Source of the DNA: Macrostomum lignano
Lineage: Eukaryota
DNA length: 64,000 nt
Assembly (NCBI GenBank): GCA_002269645.1
Contig: NIVC01000143.1
Coordinates: 62,001 to 126,000 of the forward strand
Direction of reading: 5' to 3'
Below the pieces are notes generated by a model, which had not been told where the DNA came from, ran no database searches, and worked only from the letters and a program-made list of their open reading frames with translations. The stretch's first letter is position 1; the number at the start of each line of letters is the position of its first letter. Position numbers and translations under genes: made by a program. Below are positions 9,519 through 42,670 of this stretch, in pieces.

Positions 9519-12500
9519 CGTTGGAGGAGAAAGGGGATAGGACTCCCATCGCCAGAATTCCATTCATTGAAATTCAATTGGAGTAAAATTCATACAAAGC
9601 TGTTTTTGACTAACAATTAATTACTCAGGCAGTTAGTATCAGTCTCAAAGATAACAATATGGTGATGCAATCTGTAAATAAACTCACAAATATACAGCGA
9701 TCTCAAATTCAAAAGCGATTCTCTGTTGAAATAAAAAACTAATTCAAAGACATCATTAGGGGTGCACAGAAAATGGCAAAATTAAAGGGATAGTGTAAGC
9801 ACATGTCTTTGACTAAGTAATTGGTAATTTGAAACTCATGCGCATTTTATGCCTTTCCACTACTTTTACTTGTTTTTTAATAACCTATGATCGACTGGCT
9901 CGTTTTTAGTCTGAATCCTGCGCACCCCGAGTACAGTACGCGTATGGCATATATTTGTTTGAAGCAATGCATTAGCTACATAATAAGGATGCAAGCAAAT
10001 TGGTAGAGTGGAAGAGAAAAAAGGCAAATCATCATCAAGTTCTTTTCTAAACCTAGAGAAACTCCTAACTTGACTGGCAATACTAAAGTAGTATTTAGGA
10101 GACGATAAAGTCTAGAAAGTAAAGAAAATTTAGGAGACACTGCAAACCTACTATATAAAAATTGAACCCGATTATCTTTTCTCTTCCACTTAAAAATAAC
10201 ATTTAAGTTGGGTTCATATTATGTGCAATAAAATATATTGCCTAATATATATAATATGATTACGTATGGCTACTTTGCGCTTTAAAGAGTCTGAAAAATA
10301 AATGTGGCAATAATTGATTTTTAATGGCTAGGAGCCTAAGCCTTTTTAAAAGCATCCATTTACGCTAAAAATATCTGTCTGTAATTCATTCAGTAACGAT
10401 CTGTCACTGTAACAGTTTTTTCACTCCTTTATAACTTATATTGTAATTACTCTCAATTTGTCACTCATAATTTAGCACTCTGCAATTTATCTCTGATAAT
10501 TTGTCTCTCTCATAATTTTTCACTCGTAATTTATCCCTTTTATAATTTGTCACACTCTCAAGTTGGCACTCTCATAAGTATTAAAGCTGACAATTTTTTC
10601 ACTCTCAAGATGTCACTCTCCCAATCAATTTCTATCATCCTACCTAGGATTTTTACTGTACTGATAATCAGTTCAGTCCTACATGTAATTCAGTTCAGTC
10701 ACTGCCCTAATCAGTTCTGCTTGCCGATGAGCTGGCGCAGTACAATGTTACTCGTCCGTCCGCCTGGAGCCCGAACTTTAACGCCATCGGCACTCCGCGC
10801 ACGACTCAGAGCCACGTAGAGCTGGCCGTGCTGAAAGCAAGCCGTCGTCAGGTCGACGGCGTAGGTGCTCAGCGACTGGCCCTGGCTCTTGTGGATGGTC
10901 ATGGCGAAGCATGGCCGGATCGGGAACTGCAGGCGGCGGAAGGTGAATGGCAACTCAGCGGGACTTGGCTCGAGCGGGATTCGCGGGATGAAAACTTCCC
11001 GTCCTCGGAATACGCCTGTGGCGACCTCCGCAAGCAGCACATTGTCCCGCAAGTCGCGTAGCAGCAGCCGTGTCCCGTTGCACAGCAGCGGTGGGTCGAG
11101 GTTCCGCATCATCATGACGGGCATTCCAGCCTTCAGCTCCAGCCGGTGATGAGGCAGGCCACTGGGGTCCAGCCGGTTTAGCAGCTCCGGTGGAAAGTTC
11201 GTGGCTGCTGCATCGTCATGCGGGATCGAGTCCACCGACAGGTAGACACGGCTTGCACCCGGGAAGAGCGTGAAACAAACAGCATTAGCCTCATCAACTG
11301 TCTTGTTGTGGGGCGCAAGCAGGCTTCGTTCCGCGAACATTTGATCCCTCTCGGGGCTTGGCTCGAAGGATGGGTAGACATAACGGATGAGCTGCTCGGT
11401 GGTTGTTTCATCAGGCAGGGTGATCTCGCTAGGCAATTCAACCGTACCCTCTTCATCCTGTGGCAGCTCACCGTTGCCAACCTGGGATTTCAGTGTTAGC
11501 ACCGATTTATGAAGTAATATTCTGCGATTGTATTCATTAGTAGCACACAATTGCTCATGAGGTAATGAAATTTGTCACCACTTACCAGTTTTTGTTGTTT
11601 TTCTGTAAATGCTGCTGGCATTGCAACAATAAAAAAATGCTTTAGTAATGAGTCAGTCAACAGCTGTCGAGCTCACCTGCATCAAGAAATCCGCGTAGTT
11701 TTGGGAAGCTGAGTCGCCTTCCAACCGCAGATTTCTAGTGAGGTGATGTTGCCGGAAGTGCTGCCACAATGCCGACCGGTTTAAGCAGGCCTCGATAGTG
11801 TTGGCGTGCGTTCCACCTGGCACAACTGCCAGTAGTTGGCGGAAATCGCCGGCCAGCACCAGCAGCGCTCCTCCGAAGGGCCGCTCGACTCGCAACAGAT
11901 CCCGGAGTGACCGTTCGACAATCTCCATGTCCTTGCGATGCGTCATAGGCGCCTCGTCCCACACAATGAGTCGCGTTGCTCGCAACACTTCGGCCAGCTT
12001 GCTATTACGACCAATGGAGCAGAACGCGTTGTCCTGCCGCACTGCGGAAACAGGGATCTTGAACCTGTGACGTAAGAGGTGCACTTATATAATTAACCAC
12101 GCATACGTAGTAGAGAGTATAGTATAAGGAAAGCATGGATTTAGTTGGCATTATGAAGAAAACAAAATATAATTTTTTGTTTCTTAAGAAAGCTCACATC
12201 GAATGGGCTGTCCGTCCATCGGGAAGAATGGTGGCCGCTATGCCTGACGACGCCACAGCAACAGCAACCTGACGTCTGGCGCGAACAGCCTGTAGCAGCA
12301 GCGTCAACAGAAAAGTCTTGCCGGTGCCCCCGGGAGCGTCGACAAAGTGGAGACCTCCACCCCCAACTGATAGATCAGACATCACCGCGTTGAACACGGC
12401 TCGCTGCTCCGCCGTCAGAAGGCCGATCCGGACATCGACTTCTGCCTGGAGCTCTGCAGCTTCTTGCGGTGTCATCAGACACTGAGCCAGTGTGGTCTGA

Positions 12501-15500
12501 GAAAAAATATGCTTCTATGGATGAAATTTCTGCCTGGGATAAGCATCGTTTACAGCAAATAACAGCATAAAAATCAACGTGTAGGAAATCCATAAACGTG
12601 AATGCCAACCTCTACATCAAAGTAACGTGATAAAGGACTCATCACCTTATCTGGTTCTGCTGGTGGCTCAGGCAAGCCGTAGACAGTCAGCCGGCACCCT
12701 CCCATGGCCTCGAGCCGGTGCTTCAGCTCGTGCAGCACATTGGCCTCAGCAGCCTCAACGCTATAGCCCAGGTGCAGCAGGTCGGCCGCCATCTCACTGC
12801 AGAACTCATGCCAGAGCATGGCTGGGTCGCTGGGATCGCCATGAGTTAGAATGGCAGCAAACAGGCGGCGCATAGCGGCTGGCATTCGCGTCTCCGCGGC
12901 CTCGCGCATACACAGTCGCCAGTGGTTGTCGTCCTCGAGCAACCCGCGAGCCTGGCAGGCGGCCTTGAAGCTCGGCAGGAGGACGCCGTTCACAGTACGC
13001 AGCGACTCGAAGGATGTCGGGCCAGGCACATTCACCAACAACAGACGGAGGTAGAAGCACTCTCCCATCCGTGGACTCACTGTGTACATGCGGCCGATGT
13101 TGCCAGTTGTCAGGATGCCCGGCCGGCTGGCAGTCTGACGACCACGACCGGCGCGATGCCACTGGTGAGTCCTACGGTCCCAGGTAAAGTGTCGGGGCAC
13201 TTCCAGATAGAGCAGGTCCCGTGCGATGAGATCCTGTCGGCAAAGCTTCAAAGTGGTTGTATGGGAAATATTTTTGTGAGAAAGCTTTATCAAAGGAATT
13301 TGATTCATTGCAATCCATTTAATCTAATTTATCTATTAGTGATGAATATTGTTGTCTATTGAATTATTTAAACTCACCTCAAAGAAGGCCGTCAGGGTTG
13401 TGGGCTTAGGCTGAGCAGCGACTGCTTGCGCTGTCTCCGGGGTGAAGTAGACCCGTTGGTCATCTGGCATGTGAACGGCCAGCCTAATCACAGCAGGGTA
13501 CCGGCTGTGCACCTCGAAGCCCAAGATCGTGCTGACCGCTTCCATGGGACCTATGTACCTGCCCAGTAGGTACTCATTAATCTCGTCCTTCTGGACCTTC
13601 TTCTTCTTGCCTTCTGGCTGTCTTGCCACCTGGCTGGACTGAAAGGCAGCTGTGCCGCTCACGGTGGCATCGCCATGCACGTCCATTGCTGGGGCTGCCT
13701 CAGGACGGAGCTGAAAGGCCGCCATGTCACTGCCCTTGGTGATGTACTTGACCACGTACTTTATGGCCTTCACCGTCGCGCAGATCTCGACATTGAGGTG
13801 ACATCTGAATTCTCGAAGTAGCGCAGGGCAGAAGGGTACCACCCAGCGGTTGTCGAAGGTAAAGCTCAACCTCTGACCGCCGCGCAACTTTGCGAACTTT
13901 GTCACCGAGAAGCCGCCCATCTCTGTGGATCGCCGACGGTAATGCGGGTAGCCATCCTCCAGCGTCATGGTAGCCGCCAAAAACTGTCTCGGGTAGCGCT
14001 TGCTACACTTCCCGTTCTCCATGCATGACGCAGCGGGGTTAAGCTGCTGCCCGCAGGGACCATGCAACATGTTTTCTACGACCAACTTGTGCAGGTCCGC
14101 GTCGGCAACGGGATCCGGGATCTCGGCAGTGATGATGTCGTCAAATTGATCCGGCGTCAGCTTGTCTGCCAGCCAAAGCAGCGCGTGCACATGCGGAAGG
14201 CCTTAAAAAATAATCAACGAAATAAATGAAATCAATGAAATCAATGAATTGAATGAAATGTCACCTACCTCGCTTCTGGTACTCGAGCGCACAAACTCGA
14301 GCGAGCGTGTCACCAAACAGACTTTTTAGCCTGTCCAAGAAGGCCTTCTTCTTCAGCTCGAACACCCTGGCGGTGATGTCCGGCCGGTCAGCTGCAGTCT
14401 GTCCCGGAAGCAGTTCCTCCAGGATCTCGGGCCACTTCGGATTGCACGTCATTGTCAGGAACAGATCTGGGCGGCCGAAGGCATGGACGTATGCCATGGC
14501 ATCCTGCTGACGCTCTAGACGATACCGAGGGCCTCCGACGTAGCTGGAAGACAGAATGATGTGGTTCCCGACCTCCTCCGGGTTACCGTCATTCTCGTGT
14601 AGCGCGTCCCGCAGACCGCGCAGGCTCTCAGACTCCAGTTCCTTCTGATGGAACCGAATGTAGTTCAGCCTTTCCAGCTCAATCTTTGCCGCCTGGTCGA
14701 CTAAGTACTGCTGAAACAGTCGACGGCCGAAGAGCAGGCTGTTGAACTGGCCTGGCCGTACTTGGATCATAAAGGCGTAGAACTTCATCGAGGTGATTCC
14801 GCGGTCCTCTTTGAGGCCAATGTGCCAACCGTCCTCACCGTATGGAAAGAGCAGCACATACTCCAACGGGTCATAGGAGCGGTGGGTCTCACAGATATTC
14901 TGGAGATCATTGGCTGGTGGTGAAGAGTAGGATAGATTTTATAAAAGGGGGAAGGTCTGCCTTTATTCCAAATAGATTATCATGATCACGTCTTTGATGT
15001 ACAAATGAGCTTTCAAATTAACTTAGTCGAAAGAACGCTTTTAAAAACTGAGATTGAGCATTGAGCTTTTGGCAATTTGGCAATTTGGCAATTTGGCCTC
15101 TACTAACAGTAATGAATCGACGCTCAGATAAACAAAGACAATGGCGCTGTATTCAAGCAGGTTACTCAACTATTTCACCGGCGCTAATGCCACCGACAAA
15201 GCCTTAACCCATTTAGGCAGAGCAAGTAGTGCATTAAATAGTATAAAAAGTGATGTGCAAATCGCTAACTATTCGTTGATTAAAGTTGATTAAGTTGACT
15301 TAAAACTGTCCACTACAACACAATTATGCATTTATCAACCATCATCAAGAGCATCTATAAAACTCACCAGCACCCCTCAGATGCAAAATCACATCCCGCC
15401 GCCGCGCTTGAATAATGCCTTCAGCGTCGCCAAGGTCCACCAGGATGCCGACCTCGCTGCATTCAGGCAAATTGAATCGCCGGACATGCTCTCCAGATGG

Positions 15501-17551
15501 ACGGGCATCAGGGTTGATGACCACATGGGCGCTCTGTAGCTGCGGGTCTTCACGCAGTCGCTCAACTGCGCACTTGAGGCTACGCACATAGCTGTTGTAC
15601 TCGTGCAGAGTGGCCTTCAGCTCCTCCAACAAACGGCCGTTTAGCCCAGATGCCCACTGCTGTCTGGTCTGCAGTTCCTGATCAACGAAGAAGACCTGAC
15701 AGAACCTGGCTTCTTCCCCCGGGTTTGGCAACAGGCTGCCGATTCTGTGGTGCATCTGGCCGTGCAGAATGAAGTTTGGGTTCCACCCTGGTGCCTCTCG
15801 CTGAACGGCACCGAGGGAAGTAAGGTGCAGCGCGCTGTTGTATTTCCTGATTTCCTTCAGGAATTCGCTACTGTGCTGATGCTCGCCAGTCAGCAGCCTC
15901 TTCAGGATGTCAGGCGGATCCCGGCGCGGCTCCAAGTGGGTCTGTGTATGAAAAAGAACAAACTAAACTATAGAAAGAGTACAGTGACAGTAAAGACAGT
16001 GAAGTTTAAGCTGAGATGGACGGTCAAAGTACAACTAATACTTGTAGCAAGACTAAGCAAAAAATAAAGAACTGTCTCAAAAAATCAACCCAAACAAACA
16101 AATTCTCACCTTCCCAGAATTGCAGCACAAACTGGCCAGTTCACCCTTCCATCGGAGGGCATGGCAGTGGGGGCACTGAACATCCATGCGACCTAGCTGT
16201 GTTGTATGTGCCCGAAGTCGCTGCTCTACTTCACGGCGCCGTTCGAGTCGTTTCTCGCGCTCTTCTTCTGGCTCAGCTGCCCGAAGTTGCTGCTCTACTT
16301 CACGCTGCCGTTCAAGTCGTTTCTCGCGCTCTTCTTCTGGCTCAGCTGCCCGGAGTCGCTGCTCTACTTCACGGTGCCGTTCAAGTCGTTTCTCGCGCTC
16401 TTCTTCTGGCTCAGCTGCCCGGAGTCGCTGCTCTTCTTCCCGGCGTCTTTCAAGCCGAGCACTTCGGCGGACTCCAGGCTCCGCTTGTCGCCGAGTCAGC
16501 TCCTGTTGACGTCGAGACTGAAGTCTCTCCTCACGCTGTTCCTCATCCTCCGCTTCTGACCGTCTGCGATTCGCCTCACGTGCCTGTTGCAGGCGAGCCT
16601 CGCGCTCGTTGGGGTTTTCTTCATTGCGCCGCTGCCTGGCCATTTTAGCACTCCGGCTGCTACTCGAAAAACTTCCTCTACCACGCTTAGGCATTGGCAA
16701 TAGATGTAAAATATTCTAATAGATAGAGACTTAGAGATTTACTTGAAGATTCAATATATTGTGTGCAGGTAGATGCAAAAATTGTAGTTTGCATGAAAGT
16801 GGTTTAGCTAGGAATTTTTAGTATATTGGAAATCAAGGTGGCTTTTTTAAATATTCAAATATCATCTCCACTGGGGCGCAGAGAAACCCGCAAATAATTC
16901 CAAAACACTGTACATCGCTATTGTGTACACACCGTGCTGTCCGTGCGCCGAGCCCTATCGCCAACCCCCAATACACTCAAATGATAGCTGGCTTGAATGT
17001 ACGAACGCAACCCCACAATCCCGCAAGACGCCGATAATAAAACCAATTGAATTTCGACACATCTATCTATCTATCTATCTATTCTATCTGTTTACACTGT
17101 ACATTGCTATGTACACTCAGCCCAAACCAACCCCCCCCTTATTCCGGGGCACTCAGCCCAAACCAACCCCCCCCTTATTCCGGGGGAATCATTAAATTTT
17201 ACTGCACCCCAACACGCGGGGGTTTTATTTGCATTGAACCCAGAACGCGCGTCACGCACCCCTCCAATACACAGCGGCCCGCGGGGGGAGGTTGGGGAGG
17301 TTGTTTTTACAATTATATGCCACTACCCCTCCACTGAAGAGGCAAAGTGGCCAAAGAAGGTTAAGAAAACAGTTTTCTGCTTTTTTAACGGACTTAACTT
17401 TGAAAATTTCAACATTAAAATAGCCTATTTGTTGCGTAGGAAAATTCTGAATTGATATATGTACGTCCCGCATTTGAGTTGCCAGCCGTCTAGGAGGAGA
17501 TACGCGTTAAACCCGGCCGGTCGATCGACCCACTCAGCTTTAGATATAAGA
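9519..17551 (-). mobile_element. Autonomous Helitron (~8.0 kb)
   Basis: Contains the complete Rep/helicase gene. 5' end TCTTATATCTAAAGC at 17551. The 3' terminal segment at 9519-9565 is present but lacks the right hairpin arm and terminal GGCCTCG. Confidence 0.92.
10711..16694 (-). CDS. Helitron Rep/helicase transposase (HUH endonuclease + PIF1-family SF1B helicase), 8 exons, ~1561 aa, no stops or frameshifts
   Basis: Exons 16694-16110, 15941-15368, 14913-14269, 14201-13378, 13245-12646, 12496-12198, 12064-11677 and 11481-10711. All introns are GT-AG and phase-compatible (4686 nt in total). Rep motifs: DLFLTMTCNPKW, EYQKRG|LPHVH, YVVKYITKG. Helicase motifs: DAPGGTGKT, LIVWDEAPM, GDFRQLL, FAMTIHKSQGQS, QLYVALSR. 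N-terminal 23-aa repeats and a CPHC...CC zinc motif. Confidence 0.96.
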
Positions 17552-28057: not shown

Positions 28058-28393
28058 AGTGACTGATGATGACTGAAATTAGAAGCGAAAATCGAACTGT
28101 CTATCACACTGGCTATCATTTTCTGTCAATTATAAATAATTTATCAGATTCATTTTTTAAAAATTGGATACAGCTTTTTGAAAATAAGATCAAAGCAAGT
28201 CTTTTGCATCCAAAAATTAAAATAAGAGGTACATACTTAATACCAATTTAGCAAATAATGTCAAACATATATAGAAAGAATACTAAAATAATGTTATATC
28301 AAGCCATATACATAGATTAAATCTTCATTTGCTCTACAGATGATTAAAAAGCTACACTAATGTATAAATTTTATTTGTGATGTTAGCTAGTCG

Positions 28394-28557
28394 CAGGGGC
28401 GTCCCCCATGACCCCCCCCCAGCCGGCTGATCCAGGCCAAATTTTCAGACCCCCCCCCGTCGCAGAGGCCTAGCACCTCCTGCCCCCCGTTGCCGCTGTG
28501 AGCCTGTGACTGACTGTGACCCAACCCCCCCAGAAGGAAGTCCTGGCTACGCCACTG
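28394..28557. mobile_element. hAT-type MITE, 164 bp, 8-bp TSD
   Basis: Ends CAGGGGCGT... and ...ACGCCACTG (8/9 inverted match). Flanked by GCTAGTCG at 28386-28393 and 28558-28565. Confidence 0.8.
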
Positions 28558-31500
28558 GCTAGTCGAGTACATCTAAAGAATATATTCCAGTATTCAATCT
28601 TCCAAAAAAGTTTAGTAAAATTATCTAGTTCATCTATATACTTTCCTTTTTTGAACACTCATTCAACGCGATTAAAGCAACCACATTATTTTTAAAAAAC
28701 TGAAATTAATTTTGAATAATTTCTTAAAAGCATATGCGAATGCAGATTTTTATACTCGTAGGTAATTGTTTCGCAAATGAAAGCCATGTTTATACTAAAA
28801 AAATCTAAAATTATTCTACGCTAAGCTTTTCTTTAGTCTTCTTTAGGATGTATGAGTTAAAAAACCTACGTATTTTTTAACAAGGCGATTGTAAAAATCC
28901 TGTTGTTTTTATTATAAGATCTCCGTCATGGTCAAATTAGAAAGTTTTAACTAGACTCTAGAGAGACAAATTAGACAAAGACAAACCGACATCTGATTGC
29001 GAAAAAAAAATTCTGCATATTTCAGTCAATCTCAAATCTGCAAGAATTCACTTAATGCTGTAAATACAGAGCGGATTTATTTATTTTGAACCTAAAGCTA
29101 AGCCAATCAATCCTTACTAGTACTACTACTACATCGTAAATGTGTCTCCTTCTTCAAGTCAAATTAAAGGAATGACTCTGACAACTTTAAAGTATATCAT
29201 TAGACAACAATCTATTGTAATAATAAGCTTTTATAAAAATAAACAGAGAGCTCGTGTAATGCACTTGTAGAAACATAATTCTTCTTGACATACAATTTTG
29301 TTTTAAACTAATCAACTTTAAACAGCTGATGAATGTTTTTAAATTATTTTTTTCAAAACAATGTCCGAATTTTCTCGCGGTCTAGCCTCGCTCCCGCGGC
29401 TCTTGATGACATCAAATCAGAAATCACAAATGTCCTGGTCTGTTGGATTGTTCCTTCGTTTTTTTGACTGACTTGATCTTTTTCAATTTTGGTCACTCCA
29501 TTTTTAACGATTTTCGCAGTGGAGTCGCCAATTGCAGGACCAGAATCAATTTTCGGATTTTTTCGTATTTTGGATTCTATTTGTAGGATTTTTCTTTTTC
29601 TATAGGCCTAACCTAACAAACTTACTTTGACTGTTGTGTTGCAAATGTAATTTACAAGCAATGCATCTACCATCATTAGGCCTGATATACTAGAACTAGG
29701 CCCTATAGGCCTACTCTATCTATGGTCTATAGCGATAGCACTAGGCCCTAACACAAAAGGCATCTGACTGGGGACTGGAAAACATGTAGGAAAGTTTAGA
29801 CCTAGCATGATAATGATTAAAGACCTTATGGTTATGGTATACCATAGGCCTATAAATGTATTCCTTTGCTTGGTCAATTTTAAAATATGTGATAGGCCTA
29901 TATCAAATAGCTATTGGCATTGAATTGCATTGGCATCTGCCATTTAGAAGTTAGCAACTTTTCTAATTGGGAAAATAGTCAGGCTAGGGTAGCGTAGGCC
30001 TAATATTAAATATTTTAGTTTTAATTTTGGCAGTTGTTATTTGTCTAGACGAATAGCATTTTTACTATTTGTCTGGTTAAATTGCTAACTGTTTAAATTG
30101 CTATTTGTTTTGTGATGAATATTCTAGATTTTTAAGACATTTTCACATATACTGATTCATATTTTGTTGCATACTGGTGTATGTATAAGAAAACAGTGTA
30201 CTCAATTTGGCATAATTTGGTATATAAAACATACACTAGGCCCCTAGTACAACAACATAATAATCAAGATACGAGTAAGAAGTTTTTGAATTCTAGGAAT
30301 ATTCATCCCTGTAGTTTCTATAAAATAGATATTTTAGCATTATCAATTTAACCAGTCAAATAATAAAAAGCCTATTTGTCTGGTATTACCCAGATGAACA
30401 AGTAAGCATGTTCATTATCCAATAACCGGACAAATAACAACTGCCTTTAATTTTTAGTATATAGGATAAGATAGGCCTACTATATCATATCTAGCTATTT
30501 AAAGTTAAATTTAATTTTTTGGTCAATAATTTCTTTTATATTTGATATTCTAGTCTAGGCCTATATAAGATTTTAATAGACCTAAGTAGATAGGAAATAT
30601 ATAATCCCAAGTTTTGCTAATCTTAGGATTCTTGGGATAAAAATATCTAGATTTAAAAAATTCTGGGATTCTTAGGATTAACTTAAGATAGGCCTATCTT
30701 GAACTTTGCCAATCCCAGGATCCTAACAAAGTAGGCTAAGATCCTAGGATTGCATGATTTACAAAAATTCTAATCATTGTTATTGCAATTTTAGCCTATA
30801 AAGCTATCTAATTTGATTTTAAAAGGCTAGAGCTCTTAATAATAAAGTAGAATAGAGTAAAATATTTTGCAAACAAGAAACTGATAGTGAGCTTTAAATG
30901 TTAGTATGACACTAGTTAATTAAAGCTGGCTGCTAGCATCTAGAATAATTTTATTGCTCCCCCTTTTAGTGGGGCCCAGTGAGTTTTCTTATCAGTTGGC
31001 TCTGGCGCAATCATTAAAATTGGCGGTGAAAAAGATTCTAGTTGATAAAATTTGCATTGAAAAAGCCCATTTCAAACAGTTTTTCGAATATTTAATCCCT
31101 TTAGCATTGAAGCAGATACAAGAAATTTTAACCATACAATCCTAGGCTGATTACAAATCTTTTGGCAAAAACGCAATCAAAATTGGAGAAGAATTGCAAT
31201 CTCTAGAGCATTATGGACAAGCATAAAAACAAATATTAGAGATTTAGTATAAGACAAGCATACAAACCTTAGAGATTTAGTATATTTAGATTAGAAGATT
31301 AGAAGAAGATAGATAGAAGAATAGAATATAGGCTGATATCAAAGACTTAGACCTCATCTTCCTAGGGGTTTTTTTAGATAGAGAACTGATAGGCCCTAGC
31401 TTGAGTTGTGGTCTAATAGCAATAGCAAGGTCCCATTATTCTAATCCCAACCTTGGCCAAGGACTTTTGAAGGTAAAGGTCTGCTTAAAATAGTTCTATT

Positions 31501-32867
31501 ACCACTCCTACACTGTATGCAAAGGCAGCTAGGCATCTAAAGGGTGTCTCAATAGTGCTAAGAATAAGGTCTTTTGCATAGGAGGCTTCTAATCTATGCA
31601 AGGTCTAGTACCTTTGATTTTAGCTAGGTTTGAGATAAAAGGAGAGTTCTAATAAACAATGATTTGACTCCTATCTAGTAAGTGCCAGCGCTGCAATTAG
31701 AAACAATGAGGAATTTGCTTCTATTGCTGTAGGCTTTATGCACAGGTTTTTAAATTAATTACATTAGACTGCGAGTAGGCCTACCATATGGCATTTGCAT
31801 ACAGTTAGCATATATATTATTATACTTGCAATTTCCTTACAATCTGCTTATAGCTTCAATTTTGTATCCCTTCAGCCTTAACCTTCTTACTAGCCTGCAT
31901 GTTTCAAAAGCTATGATTTTCACTCTACAAATAGCTTAGCTATAGATATTACTATTTAAGTATAAATGATTGAATTATTGCAAACCAAGATTAGGATCCC
32001 AATGGTCAATCCTGGGATTTTTTAATCTTAGGCAAGTATGATCCTAGGATTAAAAAGCCTGAGATTCAGGTATAATCAAAGCCCTAGGATTTAGGCCTAA
32101 TCCTGAGATTACTAGATCCTAGGATCTTAGGATTGTATTCCCTTTTAGTAGACCTATAGACCTACTTAACTTGATTAAAAAATAATTGCTTAATTTTTTA
32201 GACATGATATATTGACCTTTTTACTTATAATTACAAAAACAAATAAAAATATATATTATATAATATTAATATATATGGTCTTTAAAAGCTTTGTGTTTGA
32301 CAATGACTTATAAAGTTGTTCTGTTGTCTTTGTCTATTATTATTTTGCTTAAAATGTATTTTAGGCTAGATAGTATTATTTTAATTTCACATTTATAATA
32401 CCAATATCAAAACATTTATTCTATTCTATTGACTATTTTACTTATTATAAACACTATATATGATTAATGTTAACTCTTTCTCACTTCATTTAAGTTAAAC
32501 ATGTATTAAAAACAACTTTGTTGTATCCTTTTTAAATATTTAATGACTTTCGTGACCTTATATCCTCATTAATATAATATATAAATAGTGCTAAGGGCCT
32601 TGATAAAAACATTGTAAAGTTTAAAGATTTAATCATCAATCTATACTAAGCTAACCAATTCATTTCAAATATTTTGGTCATTTTTAGGGCAACTTATAGA
32701 GATGTCCCCAATAGTCAGTAAAATTTGTATTAGAAATTTTTCTATAACGTATTTTAATGAATGTCTAGTAAAGAATCTGGCTTATTTTTAGAAGATGGCT
32801 TTTTGATGATTAATGTAAGCTGTTTTTATAATTTACTTTATAAATTTGTCTTCCATTTCAGATCTGA

Positions 32868-34525
32868 ATGAAAGGCAGTGGAAGTAACAAGCCTAAAGAT
32901 TTCCCAGTGTTTGTTTCAACACAAAAACTGGAGTTTATAGCAAAATTGGCTAATACACACAAACAAATCCTTACTATATACAATATCTATAACACTTCAA
33001 TTGCCTTTAGCATTTTATCAACTCATCCAAATCACTACATGGTGAGGGAAAGCAAAGGTGTGATACAGAAACAGTGTTGTGTTGATGTGTAAGTACCATT
33101 GTTATGCAGATAGTCTAAACATTAGCCCAATTCTTAGAAACCACTGTGTCTAAAATTCATCACATTTCTTAAAAAATCACCCTGTCTGAACATTAGCTTA
33201 TTTCCTAAAAAGCACTCTGTCTAAAATAGTTCATTTCTTAGAAACCACTCTGTCTAAAATAGTTCATTTCTTAGAAACCACTCGTCTAAATATTTCATTT
33301 CTTAGAAACCAGTCTCTCTAAGATAGTTCATTTCTTAGAAACCACTCTGTCTAAGATAGTTCATTTCTTAGAAACCACTCTGTCTAAAATAGCTCATTTC
33401 TTAGAAACCACTCTGTCTAAAATAGTTCATTTCTTAGAAAGCACTCTCTCTAAGATAGTTCATTTCTTAGAAACCACTCTAAGATAGTTCATTTCTTAGA
33501 AACCCCTCTCTCTGGGATAGTTCATTTCTTAGAAACCACTGTCTAAAATAGTTCATTTCTTAGAAAGCACTCTCTCTAAAATAGTTCATTTCTTAGAAAG
33601 CACTCTCTCTAAAATAGTTCATTTCTTAGAAACCCCTCTCTCTAGGATAGTTCATTTCTTAGAAACCACTCTGTCCAAAATAGTTCATTTCTTAGAAACC
33701 ACTTTGTCTAAAGTAGTTCATTTCTTAGAAAGCACTCTCTCTAAAATAGTTCATTTCTTAGAAAGCACTCTCTCTAAGATAGTTCACTTCTTAGAAACCC
33801 CTCTCTCTAGGATAGTTCATTTCTTAGAAACCACTCTGTCTAAAATAGTTCATTTCTTAGAAACCATTCTGTCTAAAAGTAGCCCTTTCTTAGAAACTAC
33901 TCCGTCTAAAATAGCTATTTTCTTAGAAATCAAGCCAGGCAACCCTAACCACCCCGCTCATAGGCTGATTCGAGCTCAGGACTTTCGCAGTCTAACCGAA
34001 GACTCGCCGGTAGCGAAACACCGGCTTCGCATTCAACTGCACAGCCAGTCTGGCAGCTCAGTAATTGGCTATCGAGATGTCGACTGCGTGCTCCGACTCG
34101 ACGAGCCGTTGAGCTCGGCTGCTCAAAGCGGCGCTGGTCAATTTGTCGAACCTGTCGGCGTGCCGTCGCCGCTGAGTTCTGCAACCGGCGGGTCGTCTTT
34201 GCCAACGCAGCGACGGTTCGACAATAATCCGACTTTGTCCACGGCGACGACCTTGATGCCGGGAGCGACGCAAGCGCCGCTACCGTTGGGGTTTACTCTG
34301 AGCCTAGCCGTTGTGTGTGTGAGCCTTCTGGCCATGCCGCTGTATCAAGGCATCAGTTCAGAAGAATCTGCCGCAAAGCTGCAAGAACACCAGCAGCAGC
34401 AGCAGTCGCAGTCGTACTGGCTGTGGACTGTGAACAGCCTGTCCAACTTGTCCGTGTCGCACCATGTCAAACTAGTAGCAGCCTATGTCTTGGGCCTGCT
34501 CACTGTGGCTCTGTTTAGATACTGA
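32868..34525 (+). CDS. MOSPD1: Motile sperm domain-containing protein 1/3-like, 2 coding exons, ~260 aa
   Basis: Exon 32868-33088 (FPVFVSTQKLEF...HKQILTIYNIY...QCCVD, MSP domain) splices in phase 2 to 33964-34525. The second exon ends with two TM helices and VKLVAAYVLGLLTVALFRY, closely resembling the MOSPD1 C-terminus. Confidence 0.88.
33131..33930. repeat. 33-bp minisatellite (taaaatagttcatttcttagaaaccactctgtc) filling the MOSPD1 intron
   Basis: More than 20 tandem units; accounts for the spurious N-terminus of track ORF 33704..34525. Confidence 0.93.
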
Positions 34526-38194: not shown

Positions 38195-38969
38195 AATGGC
38201 AAAAATCCTTAAGATGCGTTATTTAGTTAATAGTTCCAGACTAAACAAACACTACTCATAGGAGTACTTAAACTGCTTTCACAAGCAACAGGTGTTGGGT
38301 TCATTTATTATTATAATGAAGACTTAAAACTTATTCTATACCCTATTGTTTACCTACCTGTTAACGATTACCAACTTGTTTTTTTAATGAAAAATAGTTG
38401 TTTCACTGTATTATAGTACTACTTGTGAAATCAGTAGTCTGTGCAAGTTGCAGTGATGCAAAAATTTTGACCCTATCTCAGGTATTGTGCCTGTTGCTGT
38501 AATATAAAATATGTAAGTATAAATTATTTGAGATAAACTACTAAATTGTCTGTGATTTTCTATACCTACTGCAAGTAGTGTTTATAGTGTTATCTTTAGC
38601 CCAGGCTTTAATCTTATCGATGCCTTACTCCGAGCACAAGCTTGTGTAGTGCATGTACAGAACTGGCAATTATTCATAAATAATACATTATGTATTATAG
38701 CAAATTTGCTTTTAACTGCTAAATAATGCACACCATTTTCACTGTTGATTAGCAGCAATTAAAATATATTAAATTGATCAATTGAGTTCAGTTTTATTAA
38801 CGTGTACATAATGTTTCCAAACTTAAAGCTTAAATTGAGTCATAAAATAGCTCTTATTTGCGGTTTTTTATTTCATACATATAGTTCAGCTGACGCAGCC
38901 GCTGTATGAACTTCCATTGTGTTCGATCGCTTGGGAATCGGGAAACTGTTTCACTAAACATGGCAAATT

Positions 38970-39762
38970 GCTGGGCCAGTCTCCCAGATCCCCAGTTGCT
39001 GGGCCAGCCTTCCAGATTCTCAGTTGCTGGGCCAGCCTCCCAGATCCTCAGTTACTGGGCCACCAGCCTCCCAGATCCTCAGTTGCTGTGCCAGTCTCCC
39101 AGATCCCCAGTTGCTGGGCCAGCCTTCCAGATTCTCAGTTGCTGGGCCAGCCTTCCAGATCCTCAGTTACTGGGTCACCAGCCTCCCAGATCCTCAGTTG
39201 CTGTGCCAGCCTCCCAGATCCTCAGTTGCTGGGCCAGCCTTCCAGATCCTCAGTTGCTGTGCCAGCCTCCCAGATCCTCAGTTGCTGGGCCACCAGCCTC
39301 CCAGATCCTCAGTTGCTGGGCCAGCCTTCCAGATCCTCAGTTGCTGGGCCACCAGCCTCCCAGATCCTCAGTTTCTGGGCCAGTCTCCCAGATCCCCAGT
39401 TACTGGGCCAGCCTTCTCTCAGTTGCTGGGCCAGCCTCCCAGATCCTCAGTTACTGGGCCACCAGCCTCCCAGATCCTCAGTTGCTGTGCCAGCCTCCCA
39501 GATCCTCAGTTGCTGGGCCAGCCTTCCAGATCCTCAGTTGCTGGGCCACCAGCCTCCCAGATCCTCAGTTGCTGGGCCACCAGCCTCCCAGATCCTCAGT
39601 TGCTGGGCCACCAGCCTCCCAGATCCTCAGTTGCTGGGCCACCAGCCTTCCAGATCCTCAGTTGAAGGGCCACCAGCCTCCCAGATCCTCAGTTGCTGGG
39701 CCAGCCTCCCAGATCCTCAGTTGCTGGGCCAGCCTCCCAGATACTCCGTTGCTGGGCCAGCA
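38970..39762. repeat. 28-bp minisatellite (gccagcctcccagatcctcagttgctgg) with +cac length variants
   Basis: Tandem units read directly; generates repetitive ORFs in all three plus frames. Confidence 0.93.
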
Positions 39763-40449
39763 CCCCGGATCAACAAGTGGTAGCTTTAACTCCACTCTAG
39801 CCATTCTAGCCATAAATCTCCACTCTCTCCTCACCAGTTTAAGTTAGAGCTTTGTGACGCAACTTGCATCACCTACAGTTTGGGCGAGAACTTCTAGCGT
39901 GTGTTAATTGAGTCAATTGGTTCGAAGAGGAAAGTGAAGATAAAAGAATTCATCCGTTTTCTAAGACTATCAAATAAGTTCTAAGTTATCAATGATAAAC
40001 ATTCCGTCATTATTCATTGCCATGCAGTTTCAATAGGTGTTAAATCAAAAGTACACGGCTAACTTTATTGCAGAAATGTTTGAGTGTGTTGTGTACTCCT
40101 TATAATCAGACCATTTTCCGCGTAAATATTGTTTTTTTAATAAGTTAGAGAACAGTGAGTCAGCAGCCATTTACCCCCCTCTTTCAATGCTCAACTAGCT
40201 TTAAGTGTGGAGGTCAAAATTCGTTGTCTGTATTGAAAGCCGATAAAAACAAGGGGTGGGTGCGGAATGCTAATTGAGGCTATTTTTAGTGTATATAGTT
40301 TTACAGTCAGCCAGTCAATACAACTGCAAAACCCCCCACCCTCCACCCAAGTCCAGAAATCTTACTCTAGCCTGTCATTTGGTTAAGACCCCCCGTAGGG
40401 CTTTGGCTGCCACACCCTCCTCTTAGTATTGGGGTGGAGATCGCAGCCA

Positions 40450-40635
40450 CGTCAGCCAATCAGCGAGCTCCGCGGCCTCAAACCCTTCTTACCCTTTAGG
40501 CCTTATTTTGGCTCGCTGAATCACCCCACCAGCTTGAAATCTCTTACCCTCCCCCGTCTGCCGATTGGCTGTGGAATTGAGCTTCGCAGTCTATAAATAC
40601 TGACCAGCATGACGCACAAATTATCTCACTATCAT
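40450..40635 (+). promoter_or_regulatory. Pol II promoter of the GYGKKDY gene
   Basis: CCACGTCA plus CCAAT (40456-40460), inverted CCAAT (ATTGG 40564-40568), TATAAA at 40592-40597 and an Inr-like TCATTC about 35 bp downstream, ~70 bp before the ATG. Confidence 0.7.
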
Positions 40636-40705
40636 TCATTTATTCAATTAACTGTACTTTCGCGCCTAATTAATTAATATTGCGTCTTGATTTACTGCAC
40701 CAATA

Positions 40706-41671
40706 ATGCGTCTGGTTGTGCTATTCGCCTTGGCCACAGTGGCCCTAGCCGGCGGCTACAATAGTCGCGAGGACTACGAGAAGCTCTATTACAAAGACGA
40801 TTACAAATATCCAGTAGCAACTTATGGTAGCTACAAGACCTACGACAAGAAGGACGACTGCTACGACAAGAAGGACGACGGCTACGGCAAGAAGGACTAC
40901 GGCTACGGCAAGAAGGACTACGGCTATGACAAGAAGGGCTACGGCGAGAAGGATTACGGCTACGGCGAGAAGGATTACGGCTACGGCAAGAAGGATTACG
41001 GCTATGGCAAGAAGGATTACGGCTACGGCAAGAAGGACTACGGCTATGGCAAGAAGGACTACGGCTATGGCAAGAAGGATTACGGCTACGGCAAGAAGGA
41101 TTACGGCTACGGCAAGAAGGATTACGGCTACGGCAAGAAGGATTACGGCTACGGCAAGAAGGATTACGGCTACGGCAAGAAGGATTACGGCTATGACAAG
41201 AATGACTATGGCTACGGCAAGAAGGACTATGGCTATGGCAAGAAGGACTATGGCTATGGCAAGAAGGACTATGGCTACGGCAAGAAGGATTACGGCTACG
41301 GCAAGAAGGATTACGGCTACGGCGAGAAGGATTACGGCTACGGCAAGAAGGATTACGGCTACGGCGAGAAGGATTACGGCTACGGCAAGAAGGATTACGG
41401 TTACGGCAAGAAGGATTACGGCTACGGCGAGAAGGATTACGGCTACGGCAAGAAGGATTACGGCTACGGCAAGAAGGATTACGGCTACGGCAAGAAGGAT
41501 TACGGCTACGGCAAGAAGGATTACGGCTATGCCAAGGACTACGGTTACGACTACAGCGATTACTATGGCGATTACTATCCTGGCTATGCCGATATCTACG
41601 GCTACAACGATTATTACGGCGGCTACGACAAGGCGTACGGCTACGGCAGCAAAAAGAGCTACCGAAAGTGA
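40706..41671 (+). CDS. Secreted Tyr/Lys/Gly-rich repeat protein, (GYGKKDY)x30, 321 aa, intronless; candidate eggshell/adhesive/sclerotisation protein
   Basis: Signal peptide MRLVVLFALATVALA|. 30 heptads (40880-41524) whose variation is largely synonymous, with conservative K>E changes. Unique Tyr-rich N- and C-terminal flanks; upstream TATA box. Confidence 0.9.
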   Translation: MRLVVLFALATVALAGGYNSREDYEKLYYKDDYKYPVATYGSYKTYDKKDDCYDKKDDGYGKKDYGYGKKDYGYDKKGYGEKDYGYGEKDYGYGKKDYGYGKKDYGYGKKDYGYGKKDYGYGKKDYGYGKKDYGYGKKDYGYGKKDYGYGKKDYGYGKKDYGYDKNDYGYGKKDYGYGKKDYGYGKKDYGYGKKDYGYGKKDYGYGEKDYGYGKKDYGYGEKDYGYGKKDYGYGKKDYGYGEKDYGYGKKDYGYGKKDYGYGKKDYGYGKKDYGYAKDYGYDYSDYYGDYYPGYADIYGYNDYYGGYDKAYGYGSKKSYRK

Positions 41672-42132
41672 ACAGTTGCTGTGCGAACTCCATTTTAATA
41701 GTAGATTAGCGCGTTTGCTAAGTTAAATTGTCGATCGAACCGTTTATTTAGCAATTTTGTTTTTGAAAATATAAACCCTATGCTATAAACTTAAGCTTTC
41801 TGTTGTCTTGGTCTTCAATTTTTAAAACTATAGCGAGAGTGCCTACGAGTAATAGAGCTTGGGAAAGAATATCTCATAGAAATATTGCTTCGTTGAGCTT
41901 TTGAAAGCTCCATATAGTATTTATATATCTATAAAGCTATATACTAGCTAATATAGGGTTACTTGCAGTTGATTGCTTTGTTAAATGACACAAACTAACG
42001 CTTTTACATGTAAGAAGAAGCTTTGATGACAAGTTGTTTTATATTTCGAGTATACTTCAAATTCATGCACTTTTTAACCAGCTAATTACTCTTAGTTACC
42101 TGGGCACAGAAAAAGCATCCATCTTACACCTA

Positions 42133-42670
42133 AATGAGCTCCTCGAGATCCCAGACAGCCACAATGAGCTCCTCGAGATCCCAGACAGCCACAATGAGCT
42201 CCTCGAGATCCCAGACAGCCACAATGAGCTCCTCGAGATCCCAGACAGCCACAATGAGCTCCTCGAGATCCCAGACACCACAATGAGCTCCTCGAGATCC
42301 CAGACACCACAATGAGCTCCTCGAGATCCCAGACAGCCACAAAATAGCTCCTCGAGATCCCAGACAGCCACAATGAGCTCCTCGAGATCCCAGACAACCA
42401 CAATGAGCTCCTCGAGATCCCAGACACCACAATGAGCTCCTCGAGATCCCAGACAGCCACAATGAGCTCCTCGAGATCCCAGACAGCCACAATGAGCTCC
42501 TCGAGATCCCAGACAGCCACAATGAGCTCCTCGAGATCCCAGACACCACAATGAGCTCCTCGAGACACCAGTATGAGCTCCTCGAGACAGCATAATAAGC
42601 TCCCAGACACCACAATGAGCACCCAGACACCACAATGAGCTCCCAGACACTGAGACACCACAGTGAGCTC
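42133..42670. repeat. 30-bp minisatellite (aatgagctcctcgagatcccagacagccac)
   Basis: About 17 tandem units with 28-30 bp variants. Confidence 0.92.

What the first reader, a model, noticed from the sequence alone, without database searches (positions are those of the whole stretch)
40450..41671. Secreted (GYGKKDY)30 protein: candidate catechol-crosslinked eggshell or bioadhesive component
Seen: strong TATA/CCAAT promoter, single exon, signal peptide, and 30 heptads in which Tyr, Lys and Gly are each 2/7 of residues, with Tyr always next to Gly/Asp and a KK pair. Codon variation is mostly silent, so the peptide rather than the DNA repeat is conserved. Known: Tyr/Lys/Gly-rich DOPA precursors include the schistosome eggshell protein p48 (GYDKY repeats), sandcastle-worm cement Pc1 (GGYGYGGKK-type) and mussel foot proteins. 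Inferred: a tyrosinase substrate for quinone tanning or wet adhesion. I do not recognise this heptad from a described protein.
Basis: partly seen in the sequence, partly recalled or inferred. Interest (0 to 1): 0.75.

Follow-up and report, generated by a model that had tools for sequence, protein, structure and literature searches.

The report
Secreted tyrosine-rich heptad-repeat flatworm protein
A Macrostomum flatworm genome carries a probably real, intron-free, undescribed gene for a secreted, disordered protein made of about 30 GYGKKDY repeats, most likely raw material that is oxidatively cross-linked into the eggshell or egg cement, though no expression or chemistry could be checked here.

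Summary
ORF 40706..41671 (+) encodes 321 aa: a signal-like N-terminus, about 31 heptads (24 exact GYGKKDY) and Tyr-rich acidic flanks. Composition is Y 27%, G 22%, K 21.5%, D 15%. A TATAAATA box lies 107 nt upstream of the ATG, and two CAGCCAATC(A/G)G boxes lie further upstream.

Three frames are open across the 21-bp array. Only the GYGKKDY frame shows silent-biased variation (18:7, against 5:20 and 1:24), in-frame indels and locally preferred codons. It is also the only one with a signal peptide.

The window comes from Macrostomum lignano or a sibling species, judged from Helitron hits, a shared satellite and a shared repeat element.

No orthologue, Pfam family, PDB relative or literature mention was found. 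The protein is predicted disordered. Similar (D/G)YGY(G/D)KK repeats behind signal peptides occur in unrelated eukaryotes (oomycete, chytrid, aphelid, metagenomic ORFs), all uncharacterised and matching only within the repeats.

Best reading, by inference only: a lineage-restricted structural precursor cross-linked through tyrosine oxidation. It resembles schistosome eggshell protein p48 (26% Y, 15% G), which tyrosinase cross-links. Eggshell or egg cement is more likely than temporary adhesion. This is a new member of a known kind, of moderate interest, and its function is untested.

The parts
40453..40463 (+). Distal CCAAT box (CAGCCAATCAG), about 165 nt upstream of the inferred transcription start
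   Evidence: One of only two matches to CAGCCAATCRG in 64 kb, expected 0.07. Fits the NF-Y extended consensus (from my own knowledge).
40561..40571 (-). Proximal inverted CCAAT box (CAGCCAATCGG on the - strand), about 60 nt upstream of the inferred transcription start
40592..40599 (+). TATA box TATAAATA, 107 nt upstream of the ATG
   Evidence: There are 5 matches in the window on both strands.
40620..40705 (+). Inferred 5' UTR. The transcription start is placed about 30 nt after the TATA box. The stretch contains no ATG and no AG acceptor.
   Evidence: Read directly from the sequence. The start site itself is inferred, not shown.
40706..40750 (+). Signal peptide, residues 1-15 (MRLVVLFALATVALA), with inferred cleavage after A-L-A
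   Evidence: Hydropathy 2.97. It is the only helix (residues 3-15) in the AlphaFold model. No dedicated signal-peptide predictor was available.
40751..40879 (+). N-terminal flank, residues 16-58. Non-repetitive, 23% Tyr, acidic (pI 4.9). It ends in two degenerate heptads, YDKKDDC and YDKKDDG.
40880..41530 (+). Heptad core, residues 59-275. About 31 units of GYGKKDY, basic (pI 9.3), 28.6% Tyr, with 21-nt consensus GGCAAGAAGGATTACGGCTAC.
41531..41668 (+). C-terminal flank, residues 276-321. 35% Tyr, acidic (pI 4.9), Lys-poor until the SKKSYRK end.
41669..41671 (+). Stop codon TGA
41768..41775 (+). Possible non-canonical polyadenylation signal AATATAAA, about 100 nt after the stop. There is no canonical AATAAA on this strand.
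   Evidence: This evidence is weak.
40692..41693 (-). Antisense ORF (SRNPSCR)n, 333 aa. Judged to be a by-product of the sense frame's composition, not a gene.
   Evidence: Silent:replacement ratio 1:24. Codon index 0.50-0.58 against 0.81-0.83 for the sense frame. No signal peptide.

Best explanation
This is an intron-free, lineage-restricted gene of a Macrostomum flatworm. It encodes a secreted, intrinsically disordered polyampholyte of about 36 kDa (mature form 306 aa, pI 9.0, 29% Tyr). The architecture is signal peptide, acidic Tyr-rich flank, about 31 basic GYGKKDY heptads, then a second acidic Tyr-rich flank.

Shown:
- The gene anatomy.
- Frame-specific constraint on the repeat.
- The flatworm origin of the window.
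- The absence of detectable relatives outside the repeat.

Inferred:
- The protein is packed into secretory granules.
- After release, its tyrosines are oxidised, either by a tyrosinase or phenol oxidase to DOPA and quinone, or by a peroxidase to dityrosine.
- The oxidised tyrosines react with each other and with the neighbouring lysine amines, so a soluble precursor becomes an insoluble tanned matrix.
- The most likely destination is the eggshell (shell granules of oocytes or shell glands) or the cement that fixes the egg. This would make it the macrostomid counterpart of schistosome p48-type eggshell precursors, by function rather than by descent.
For: Real gene:
- Among three open frames, only this one has silent-biased repeat variation: 18:7 against 5:20 and 1:24. 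Five of 7 variable columns fall at codon position 3, hypergeometric P = 0.017.
- Both indels in the array are in frame.
- Six of the 7 unit codons are the locally preferred synonym. The codon index is 0.81-0.83 against 0.50-0.60 for the other two open frames.
- It is the only ORF of 41 in the window that has both a hydrophobic N-terminus and an upstream TATAAA.
- A paired CCAAT motif occurs only here in the window.
- The flanks are unique sequence, not part of a repeat family.

Secreted and disordered:
- (mean pLDDT 38; the only helix is the signal peptide).

Host:
- Helitron hits to Macrostomum lignano at 72-80% identity, against about 47% or less (a few up to about 63%) for the other listed hits.
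- The same 28/31-bp satellite (87-90% identity) and the same 2.6-kb element occur in GCA_002269645.1.

Function by analogy:
- Schistosome p48 has 26% Y and 15% G and is cross-linked by tyrosinase (PMC3499410).
- Planarian capsule tanning needs tyrosinase acting on Tyr-rich proteins (PMC5544531).
- M. lignano oocytes deposit eggshell granules, and shell and cement glands surround the antrum (PMC4490696; PMC7336406).
- Reproduction-related genes evolve fast in Macrostomum, which fits the orphan status.
- The non-repeat flanks are also 23-35% Tyr, so Tyr richness itself appears to be the selected property.
Against: - There is no transcript, protein, localisation or chemical evidence of any kind.
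- No orthologue is available to test purifying selection on the unique flanks.
- The silent-site statistic rests on about 7 variant types spread by repeat duplication. Two of the silent columns are CpG transitions.
- The gene sits in a field of at least 20 minisatellite arrays, where open frames across repeats are common.
- There is no canonical AATAAA on the sense strand.
- Composition alone cannot separate eggshell from other secreted materials.
- The gene does not appear among the M. lignano proteins held in the searched collections.
Confidence: 0.45

Rival explanations
1. It is a secreted structural or adhesive protein used somewhere other than the egg. Candidates are the duo-gland temporary adhesive, rhabdite or mucus secretion, seminal-fluid or mating-plug material, and other tanned extracellular material. 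The Tyr/Lys cross-linking or cation-pi cohesion chemistry would be the same.
For: The composition (Tyr about 27%, Lys about 21%, Gly about 22%) resembles mussel mfp-5 and sandcastle-worm Pc-1. That comparison is from my own knowledge, apart from the DOPA content of Pc-1, about 10% (PMC11667028). A secreted tyrosinase is expressed in the adhesive-gland area of the polyclad Theama (PMC9229212). The Macrostomum tail holds many gland types with fast-evolving orphan transcripts.
Against: Macrostomum adhesion is explained by the very large Mlig-ap1 and Mlig-ap2 proteins. No L-DOPA was detected in flatworm temporary-adhesive footprints. The repeat was not found in the held supplementary files of the adhesion paper (4 files, about 1.2 million characters) or the seminal-fluid screen (3 small files, about 27,000 characters).
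Confidence: 0.2
2. It is not a functional gene. A 21-bp minisatellite, one of many in this region, happens to be open in frame and to lie behind a chance ATG, hydrophobic stretch and TATA-like sequence.
For: About 55% of window positions 33-64 kb is minisatellite arrays, and several arrays give long ORFs in more than one frame. Three frames are open across this array. No homologue and no record of the protein exist. There is no canonical poly(A) signal.
Against: The silent bias is frame-specific, the indels are in frame, and the codon index is high. The signal-like N-terminus and TATA box coincide only here, against an expectation of about 0.3 ORFs by chance. The paired CCAAT boxes occur only here. 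The non-repeat flanks, 45 codons on each side, keep the frame and the Tyr-rich composition.
Confidence: 0.12
3. It is a multi-copy prohormone. Cleavage at the KK pairs, removal of the lysines and use of the preceding Gly as amide donor would release about 25 copies of the tetrapeptide DYGY-amide.
For: The architecture formally fits: a signal peptide, 27 copies of DYGYG and 28 KK pairs. The exhaustive search pulled out APGWamide-type precursors of the form (KR)APGWG(KR) as periodic look-alikes (P0288, P0240, P0295).
Against: Five units carry EK and one carries KN in place of KK. The flanks are just as Tyr-rich but lack cleavage sites and acidic spacers. Thirty spacer-free copies of a tetrapeptide with KK rather than KR sites would be unusual (my own knowledge).
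Confidence: 0.07
4. It is an antimicrobial or defence peptide precursor of the Gly/Tyr-rich type, like the C. elegans NLP/CNC peptides.
For: It is a secreted Gly/Tyr-rich repeat with basic residues. A paper on the C. elegans epidermal innate immune response was among the few literature hits for 'GYGKK' (PMC10526450; the context of the match was not read).
Against: Each heptad carries an Asp, so the net charge is only +17 over 321 residues, which is a weakly cationic polyampholyte. There is no homology. At 36 kDa it is far larger than those peptides.
Confidence: 0.04
5. The real gene is on the other strand. ORF 41693..40692 (-) would encode an Arg/Ser/Cys-rich (SRNPSCR)n protein, for example a sperm basic protein.
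For: The ORF is 333 aa and open. On the - strand, AATAAA lies 48 nt after its stop (TTTATT at 40639 on the + strand). TATAAATA lies on the - strand at 41918-41925, 225 nt upstream of its ATG.
Against: Repeat variation is 1 silent to 24 replacement in that frame. The codon index is 0.50-0.58. There is an upstream ATG with a short uORF between that TATA box and the ATG (read). The openness of this frame follows from the scarcity of xTT, xCT and xTC codons in a Y/G/K/D protein, which is an inference.
Confidence: 0.03

Closest known systems
Schistosoma mansoni eggshell precursor p48 (with p14 and p19, and the Fasciola vitelline DOPA proteins vpB/vpC)
   Same: Same phylum. Secreted, very Tyr-rich and Gly-rich (p48 has 26% Y and 15% G, against 27% and 22% here; PMC3499410). 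Built from short repeats containing Tyr, Lys and Asp (that detail is from my own knowledge). Cross-linked by tyrosinase into the eggshell.
   Different: No sequence relationship was detected. The repeat unit differs. p48 is made in vitellocytes, a cell type macrostomids lack, since their shell granules form in oocytes and shell glands. Expression and DOPA content are unknown here.
Sandcastle-worm cement protein Pc-1 and mussel foot protein mfp-5
   Same: A Tyr-Gly-Lys dominated composition with Tyr next to Gly and paired Lys. The Pc-1 decapeptide VGGYGYGGKK and the mfp-5 composition of roughly 27% DOPA, 20% Lys and 20% Gly are from my own knowledge. Pc-1 contains about 10% DOPA (PMC11667028).
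   Different: This protein carries one Asp per repeat, which makes it a polyampholyte rather than a polycation. It has no Ser or phospho-Ser. There is no homology. It comes from a flatworm, whose known adhesives differ and lack detectable DOPA.
Uncharacterised (D/G)YGY(G/D)KK-repeat ORFs from other eukaryotes: L004 (metagenome, DYGYDKK x about 20), L005, P0214/L001 (GKKDFGY x 8), P0001 (oomycete Thraustotheca, DGYGKKD), P0008 (chytrid Blyttiomyces), P0005-P0007 (aphelid), P0002-P0004
   Same: A signal peptide followed by near-identical heptads. BLASTP against L004 gives 55-67% identity, E = 1e-34. The L004 repeat unit most often reads GACAAGAAGGATTACGGCTAC, which differs from the unit here at one base.
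   Different: The similarity is confined to the repeats, and the termini and attached domains differ. The L004 flanks are 21% GC. L001 has what look like short fungus-like introns (read from the sequence). These are convergent or untraceably distant, and none has a known function.
Multi-copy amidated neuropeptide precursors (for example APGWamide precursors)
   Same: A signal peptide followed by tandem X-Gly-dibasic units with a similar period (P0288, P0240, P0295).
   Different: Those precursors use KR sites and acidic spacers. Here the flanks share the Tyr-rich composition of the repeat, and several 'sites' are mutated.

Membership tests
Platyhelminth eggshell precursor proteins (p14/p19/p48 type) | N-terminal secretory signal | tested here: met
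   The hydrophobic stretch at residues 2-15 has hydropathy 2.97 and an A-L-A motif before the inferred cleavage site. It is the only helix in the AlphaFold model. This is heuristic, because no SignalP was available.
Platyhelminth eggshell precursor proteins (p14/p19/p48 type) | Very high Tyr plus Gly content in short repeats | tested here: met
   Y 27.4% and G 22.4%, against 26% and 15% for p48 (PMC3499410).
Platyhelminth eggshell precursor proteins (p14/p19/p48 type) | Sequence homology to a known eggshell precursor | tested here: inconclusive
   No named flatworm eggshell protein appeared among the 8 hits, and none of the roughly 28 sequences I read from the 150 hits listed looked like one.
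Platyhelminth eggshell precursor proteins (p14/p19/p48 type) | Expression in the cells that make shell granules (oocytes or shell glands in Macrostomum) | not testable with these tools
   No transcriptome was accessible. The repeat was absent from the held supplementary files of PMC4490696, PMC5977470 and PMC6410801.
Platyhelminth eggshell precursor proteins (p14/p19/p48 type) | Tyr converted to DOPA or quinone, and cross-linking by tyrosinase | not testable with these tools
   This needs chemistry or mass spectrometry.
DOPA-based marine adhesive proteins (mfp-3/mfp-5, Pc-1) | Tyr flanked by Gly or Lys at high density | tested here: met
DOPA-based marine adhesive proteins (mfp-3/mfp-5, Pc-1) | Homology, or expression in an adhesive gland with DOPA in the secreted glue | not testable with these tools
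   No homologue was found. The literature argues against DOPA in flatworm temporary adhesion (PMC9229212).
Multi-copy amidated neuropeptide prohormone | Every peptide copy bounded by conserved dibasic cleavage sites | tested here: not met
   Among the 28 in-register units, 5 have EK and 1 has KN instead of KK.
Multi-copy amidated neuropeptide prohormone | Spacer or flank regions compositionally distinct from the peptide units | tested here: not met
   The flanks are 23% and 35% Tyr and have no cleavage sites.
Non-coding minisatellite | No frame-specific constraint: variation, indels and codon choice indifferent to reading frame | tested here: not met
   The silent:replacement ratio is 18:7 in one frame only, both indels are multiples of 3, and the codon index is 0.81-0.83 against 0.50-0.60. 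The number of independent variants is small.

The most novel reading that the evidence does not exclude
The gene is the main, or a major, eggshell matrix precursor of Macrostomum. It is also one instance of a previously unrecognised, repeatedly evolved class of secreted (D/G)YGY(G/D)KK heptad polyampholytes. In animals, zoosporic fungi and oomycetes alike, these would be stored as self-coacervates (basic core, acidic ends, Tyr stickers) and then locked by Tyr-Lys oxidative cross-links. That would make it a general design for fast-setting extracellular shells, open to genetic study in a transgenic, RNAi-amenable flatworm.
Probability: 0.15. Interest if true: 0.6.

Novelty: new member of a known kind. 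Interest (0 to 1): 0.35.

Why it matters
Quinone tanning of flatworm eggshells is classical biology and a drug-target idea for parasitic flukes. Its substrates, however, are known at sequence level mainly from trematodes. A small intron-free precursor in Macrostomum would give a clean handle on how a Tyr/Lys polyampholyte is stored, released and cured, because RNAi by soaking, in situ hybridisation and transgenesis all work in that animal. It would also offer a simple 7-residue design for biomimetic cross-linkable materials. The recurrence of near-identical heptads in unrelated eukaryotes suggests a convergent solution worth naming. If the gene turns out not to be expressed, the finding is only a coding-looking minisatellite.

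Tried and rejected
Searches that found nothing:
- Pfam scan of the protein gave no family.
- PDB sequence search gave only RNA polymerase II CTD heptads at E = 0.25, which is spurious.
- The word-indexed search of 5.8 billion proteins gave 8 hits, all matching only within the repeat.
- Exhaustive phmmer against 1.84 billion representatives gave 992 hits. All of the roughly 28 sequences I inspected are unrelated 7-residue-period repeats or APGWamide precursors, and none matches the unique termini.
- Exact-sequence look-ups found nothing on record.
- tblastn of the whole protein and of both termini against the window found no paralogue.
- Full-text searches for the heptad and its permutations gave 0 papers. 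Related motifs gave only irrelevant hits.
- Searches of the held supplementary files of three M. lignano papers found neither the peptide nor the DNA repeat. The one shell/cement-gland transcript named there, RNA815_13, is collagen/VWA-like and not this gene.
- Rfam and tRNA scans of the window were empty.

Other attempts:
- AlphaFold2 on the single sequence gave no fold (pLDDT 38), so no fold search was run.
- The mariner transposase did not identify the host, with a best hit of 68% identity to an unnamed protein. The Helitron did.

Readings rejected:
- The + frame-1 ORF 40824..41726 and the - strand ORF 40692..41693 as genes.
- Membership of a transposable-element family for the flanks.

Considered but not testable: tyrosine O-sulfation of the roughly 30 Asp-Tyr-Gly sites. 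An acidic residue at -1 fits the loose sulfotransferase preference, which I state from my own knowledge.
Full report
**What is there**

The window holds an ATG-initiated ORF at 40706..41671 on the + strand, encoding 321 residues. Tandem Repeats Finder reports a 21-bp array at 40840..41536 with 33.5 copies, 92% matches and 1% indels.

The product is 27.4% Tyr, 22.4% Gly, 21.5% Lys and 15.0% Asp. It contains:
- 24 exact GYGKKDY units;
- 5 GEKDYGY units and 1 DKNDYGY unit;
- one unit with an in-frame 6-nt deletion;
- two degenerate YDKKDD(C/G) units.

Within the core, Tyr is flanked D_G 30 times and G_G 29 times. The architecture is as follows.

| Part | Residues | Properties |
|---|---|---|
| Hydrophobic N-terminus MRLVVLFALATVALA | 1-15 | signal-like |
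| N-terminal flank | 16-58 | acidic, pI 4.9, 23% Tyr |
| Heptad core | 59-275 | basic, pI 9.3 |
| C-terminal flank | 276-321 | acidic, pI 4.9, 35% Tyr |

The mature protein would be about 36 kDa with pI 9.0.

Upstream lie TATAAATA (40592-40599) and two copies of CAGCCAATC(A/G)G in opposite orientation (40453-40463 and 40561-40571). These are the only two matches to that 11-mer in the 64 kb, against an expectation of 0.07, but the pattern was chosen after seeing the sites. No ATG lies between the inferred transcription start and the ORF's ATG. The sense strand has only a non-canonical AATATAAA about 100 nt after the stop.

**Is it a gene or a coding-looking minisatellite?**

This had to be asked for two reasons. 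About 55% of window positions 33-64 kb consists of at least 20 different minisatellite arrays. Three frames are open across this array: the GYGKKDY frame, a + frame-1 ORF at 40824..41726, and a - strand ORF at 40692..41693 encoding (SRNPSCR)n.

Several tests favour the GYGKKDY frame.

| Test | GYGKKDY frame | + frame-1 ORF | - strand ORF |
|---|---|---|---|
| Silent:replacement differences among 28 in-register units | 18:7 | 5:20 | 1:24 |
| Codon index against local genes and two M. lignano genes | 0.81-0.83 | 0.57-0.60 | 0.50-0.58 |

- Seven columns vary among the 28 in-register units, and five of them are at codon position 3 of the GYGKKDY frame (hypergeometric P = 0.017).
- Both indels in the array are multiples of three.
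- Six of the seven unit codons are the locally preferred synonym.
- Of 41 ATG-ORFs of at least 100 aa in the window, 2 have a hydrophobic N-terminus and 7 have TATAAA 40-200 nt upstream. Only this ORF has both.
- The flanks are unique sequence, both in the window and against 43 kb of M. lignano DNA.

There are caveats. The variation reduces to 4 silent and 3 replacement variant types spread by duplication, giving binomial P of 0.02 to 0.17 depending on the null. Two of the silent columns are CpG transitions.

The - strand does carry an AATAAA after its ORF and a TATAAATA 225 nt upstream. Its frame fails the variation and codon tests, and its openness follows from the composition of the sense frame.

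I put the probability that this is a real gene at about 0.8.

**Whose genome is it?**

- A degraded Helitron (10711..16700, - strand; Helitron_like_N and PIF1 domains) has best hits to Macrostomum lignano proteins at 72-80% identity. Most other taxa score about 47%.
- Two M. lignano loci fetched from GCA_002269645.1 share the 28/31-bp satellite of 38968-39761 at 87-90% identity. They also share the CT-rich 2.6-kb element at 70-88% identity.
- The window is therefore from M. lignano or a sibling species.

**Relatives**

- Pfam gave nothing. PDB gave nothing beyond a spurious heptad match. The literature has no mention of the heptad.
- The indexed search of 5.8 billion proteins and the exhaustive search of 1.84 billion representatives found nothing that matches the unique termini.
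- The exact protein is not on record, and there is no paralogue in the window.
- The searches did show that near-identical heptads behind signal peptides recur elsewhere:
  - DGYGKKD in the oomycete Thraustotheca, and GYGKKG in the chytrid Blyttiomyces;
  - related units in the aphelid Amoeboaphelidium;
  - GKKDFGY x 8 in a Logan contig that, as I read the sequence, has short fungus-like introns (L001);
  - DYGYDKK x about 20 in a metagenomic ORF whose flanks are 21% GC (L004);
  - further units in L005.
- Similarity to these stops at the repeat borders. I read them as convergent, or too distant to trace. All are uncharacterised.
- AlphaFold2 predicts no structure apart from the signal helix (mean pLDDT 38).

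**Most likely mechanism**

The following points are established in the literature.
- Flatworm eggshells and capsules are tanned by tyrosinase acting on Tyr-rich precursors (PMC3499410; PMC5544531).
- Schistosome p48 has 26% Tyr and 15% Gly.
- In M. lignano, eggshell granules accumulate in oocytes. [quoted passage not shown]
- Reproduction-related genes evolve fast in the genus, which fits an orphan gene.

The inference is as follows. The protein is stored in granules, where its basic core, acidic ends and Tyr 'stickers' would favour a condensed phase. It is then secreted and cured by oxidation of Tyr, either to DOPA and quinone or to dityrosine by a peroxidase. The two lysines in each heptad would serve as nucleophiles.

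That the non-repeat flanks are also 23-35% Tyr argues that Tyr density, not a released peptide, is the selected property. I put this reading (eggshell or egg cement) at 0.45.

**Rivals**

| Rival | Main points | Confidence |
|---|---|---|
| Another secreted structural or adhesive use | Weakened because Macrostomum adhesion is attributed to Mlig-ap1 and Mlig-ap2, and DOPA was not found in flatworm adhesive footprints (PMC9229212) | 0.20 |
| Unexpressed minisatellite | See the gene-versus-minisatellite tests above | 0.12 |
| Prohormone giving about 25 DYGY-amide peptides | The architecture formally fits, but 6 of 28 units have lost the dibasic site and the flanks do not look like spacers | 0.07 |
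| Gly/Tyr-rich antimicrobial precursor | Weakly cationic and far larger than those peptides | 0.04 |
| Antisense gene | Fails the variation and codon tests | 0.03 |

**Comparison and novelty**

By function, the closest known system is the p48-type eggshell precursor of trematodes. By chemistry, the closest are mfp-5 and Pc-1; their sequences and compositions are from my own knowledge, apart from the DOPA content of Pc-1.

Membership of any of these families by descent is not supported. The defining functional features (expression site, DOPA) could not be tested.

I classify it as a new member of a known kind, namely secreted Tyr-rich low-complexity structural precursors. It has an undescribed heptad and an interesting echo in unrelated eukaryotes. 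Interest is moderate, because nothing about it is surprising for a flatworm. It is, however, a clean, testable candidate in a tractable model.

Noticed in passing
L004:74-1000; L005:331-810; L001:690-1139; proteins P0001, P0002-P0008, P0214: Near-identical (D/G)YGY(G/D)KK heptad repeats behind signal peptides occur in unrelated eukaryotes: an oomycete, a chytrid, an aphelid, a fungus-like Logan contig, and metagenomic ORFs including one with flanks of 21% GC. All are unannotated. The similarity stops at the repeat borders. This may be a convergent class of cross-linkable wall or shell proteins.
   Followed up: partly
window 1-7914 and 18756-21434: A 2.63-kb CT-rich unit is repeated three times in tandem (99.9% and 95.6% identity). 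A further copy follows after the Helitron (96% identity). The same element occurs in M. lignano contig NIVC01004741.1 at 70-88% identity.
   Followed up: partly
window 10711-16700 (- strand): A degraded Helitron with Helitron_like_N, PIF1 and Pif1_2B domains spread over several frames. Its N-terminal region (16209-16485) holds a 69-bp tandem repeat that is in frame and encodes EEEREKRLER-type units.
   Followed up: partly
window 21797-22636 (+): A truncated mariner/Mos1-type transposase ORF with HTH_48, HTH_32 and a partial DDE domain. The best database relatives are only 68% identical and unnamed.
   Followed up: partly
window 24474-27247 (- strand): A GC-rich (about 54%) multi-exon host gene with an ANCHR-like B-box zinc finger (26873-27247) and low-complexity Gln/Ser/Ala-rich exons. 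It was not characterised further.
   Followed up: no
window 33131-63881: At least 20 different minisatellite arrays with periods of 5 to 35 bp, some up to about 110 copies and up to 2.4 kb long, cover about 55% of this half of the window. The gene sits as a unique-sequence island between arrays 38968-39761 and 42126-42650. Several arrays are open in two or three frames, for example 38906-39847.
   Followed up: partly
window 28000-33000: An AT-rich stretch (30-35% GC) lies between GC-rich genic DNA and the minisatellite field. I saw no ORFs or repeats of note there.
   Followed up: no
window 40692-41693 (- strand): The antisense frame of the gene is open for 333 codons, encoding (SRNPSCR)n. It is flanked on the - strand by TATAAATA (41918-41925) and AATAAA (40639-40644). 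It fails the silent-site and codon tests, but strand-specific RNA-seq would settle it.
   Followed up: yes
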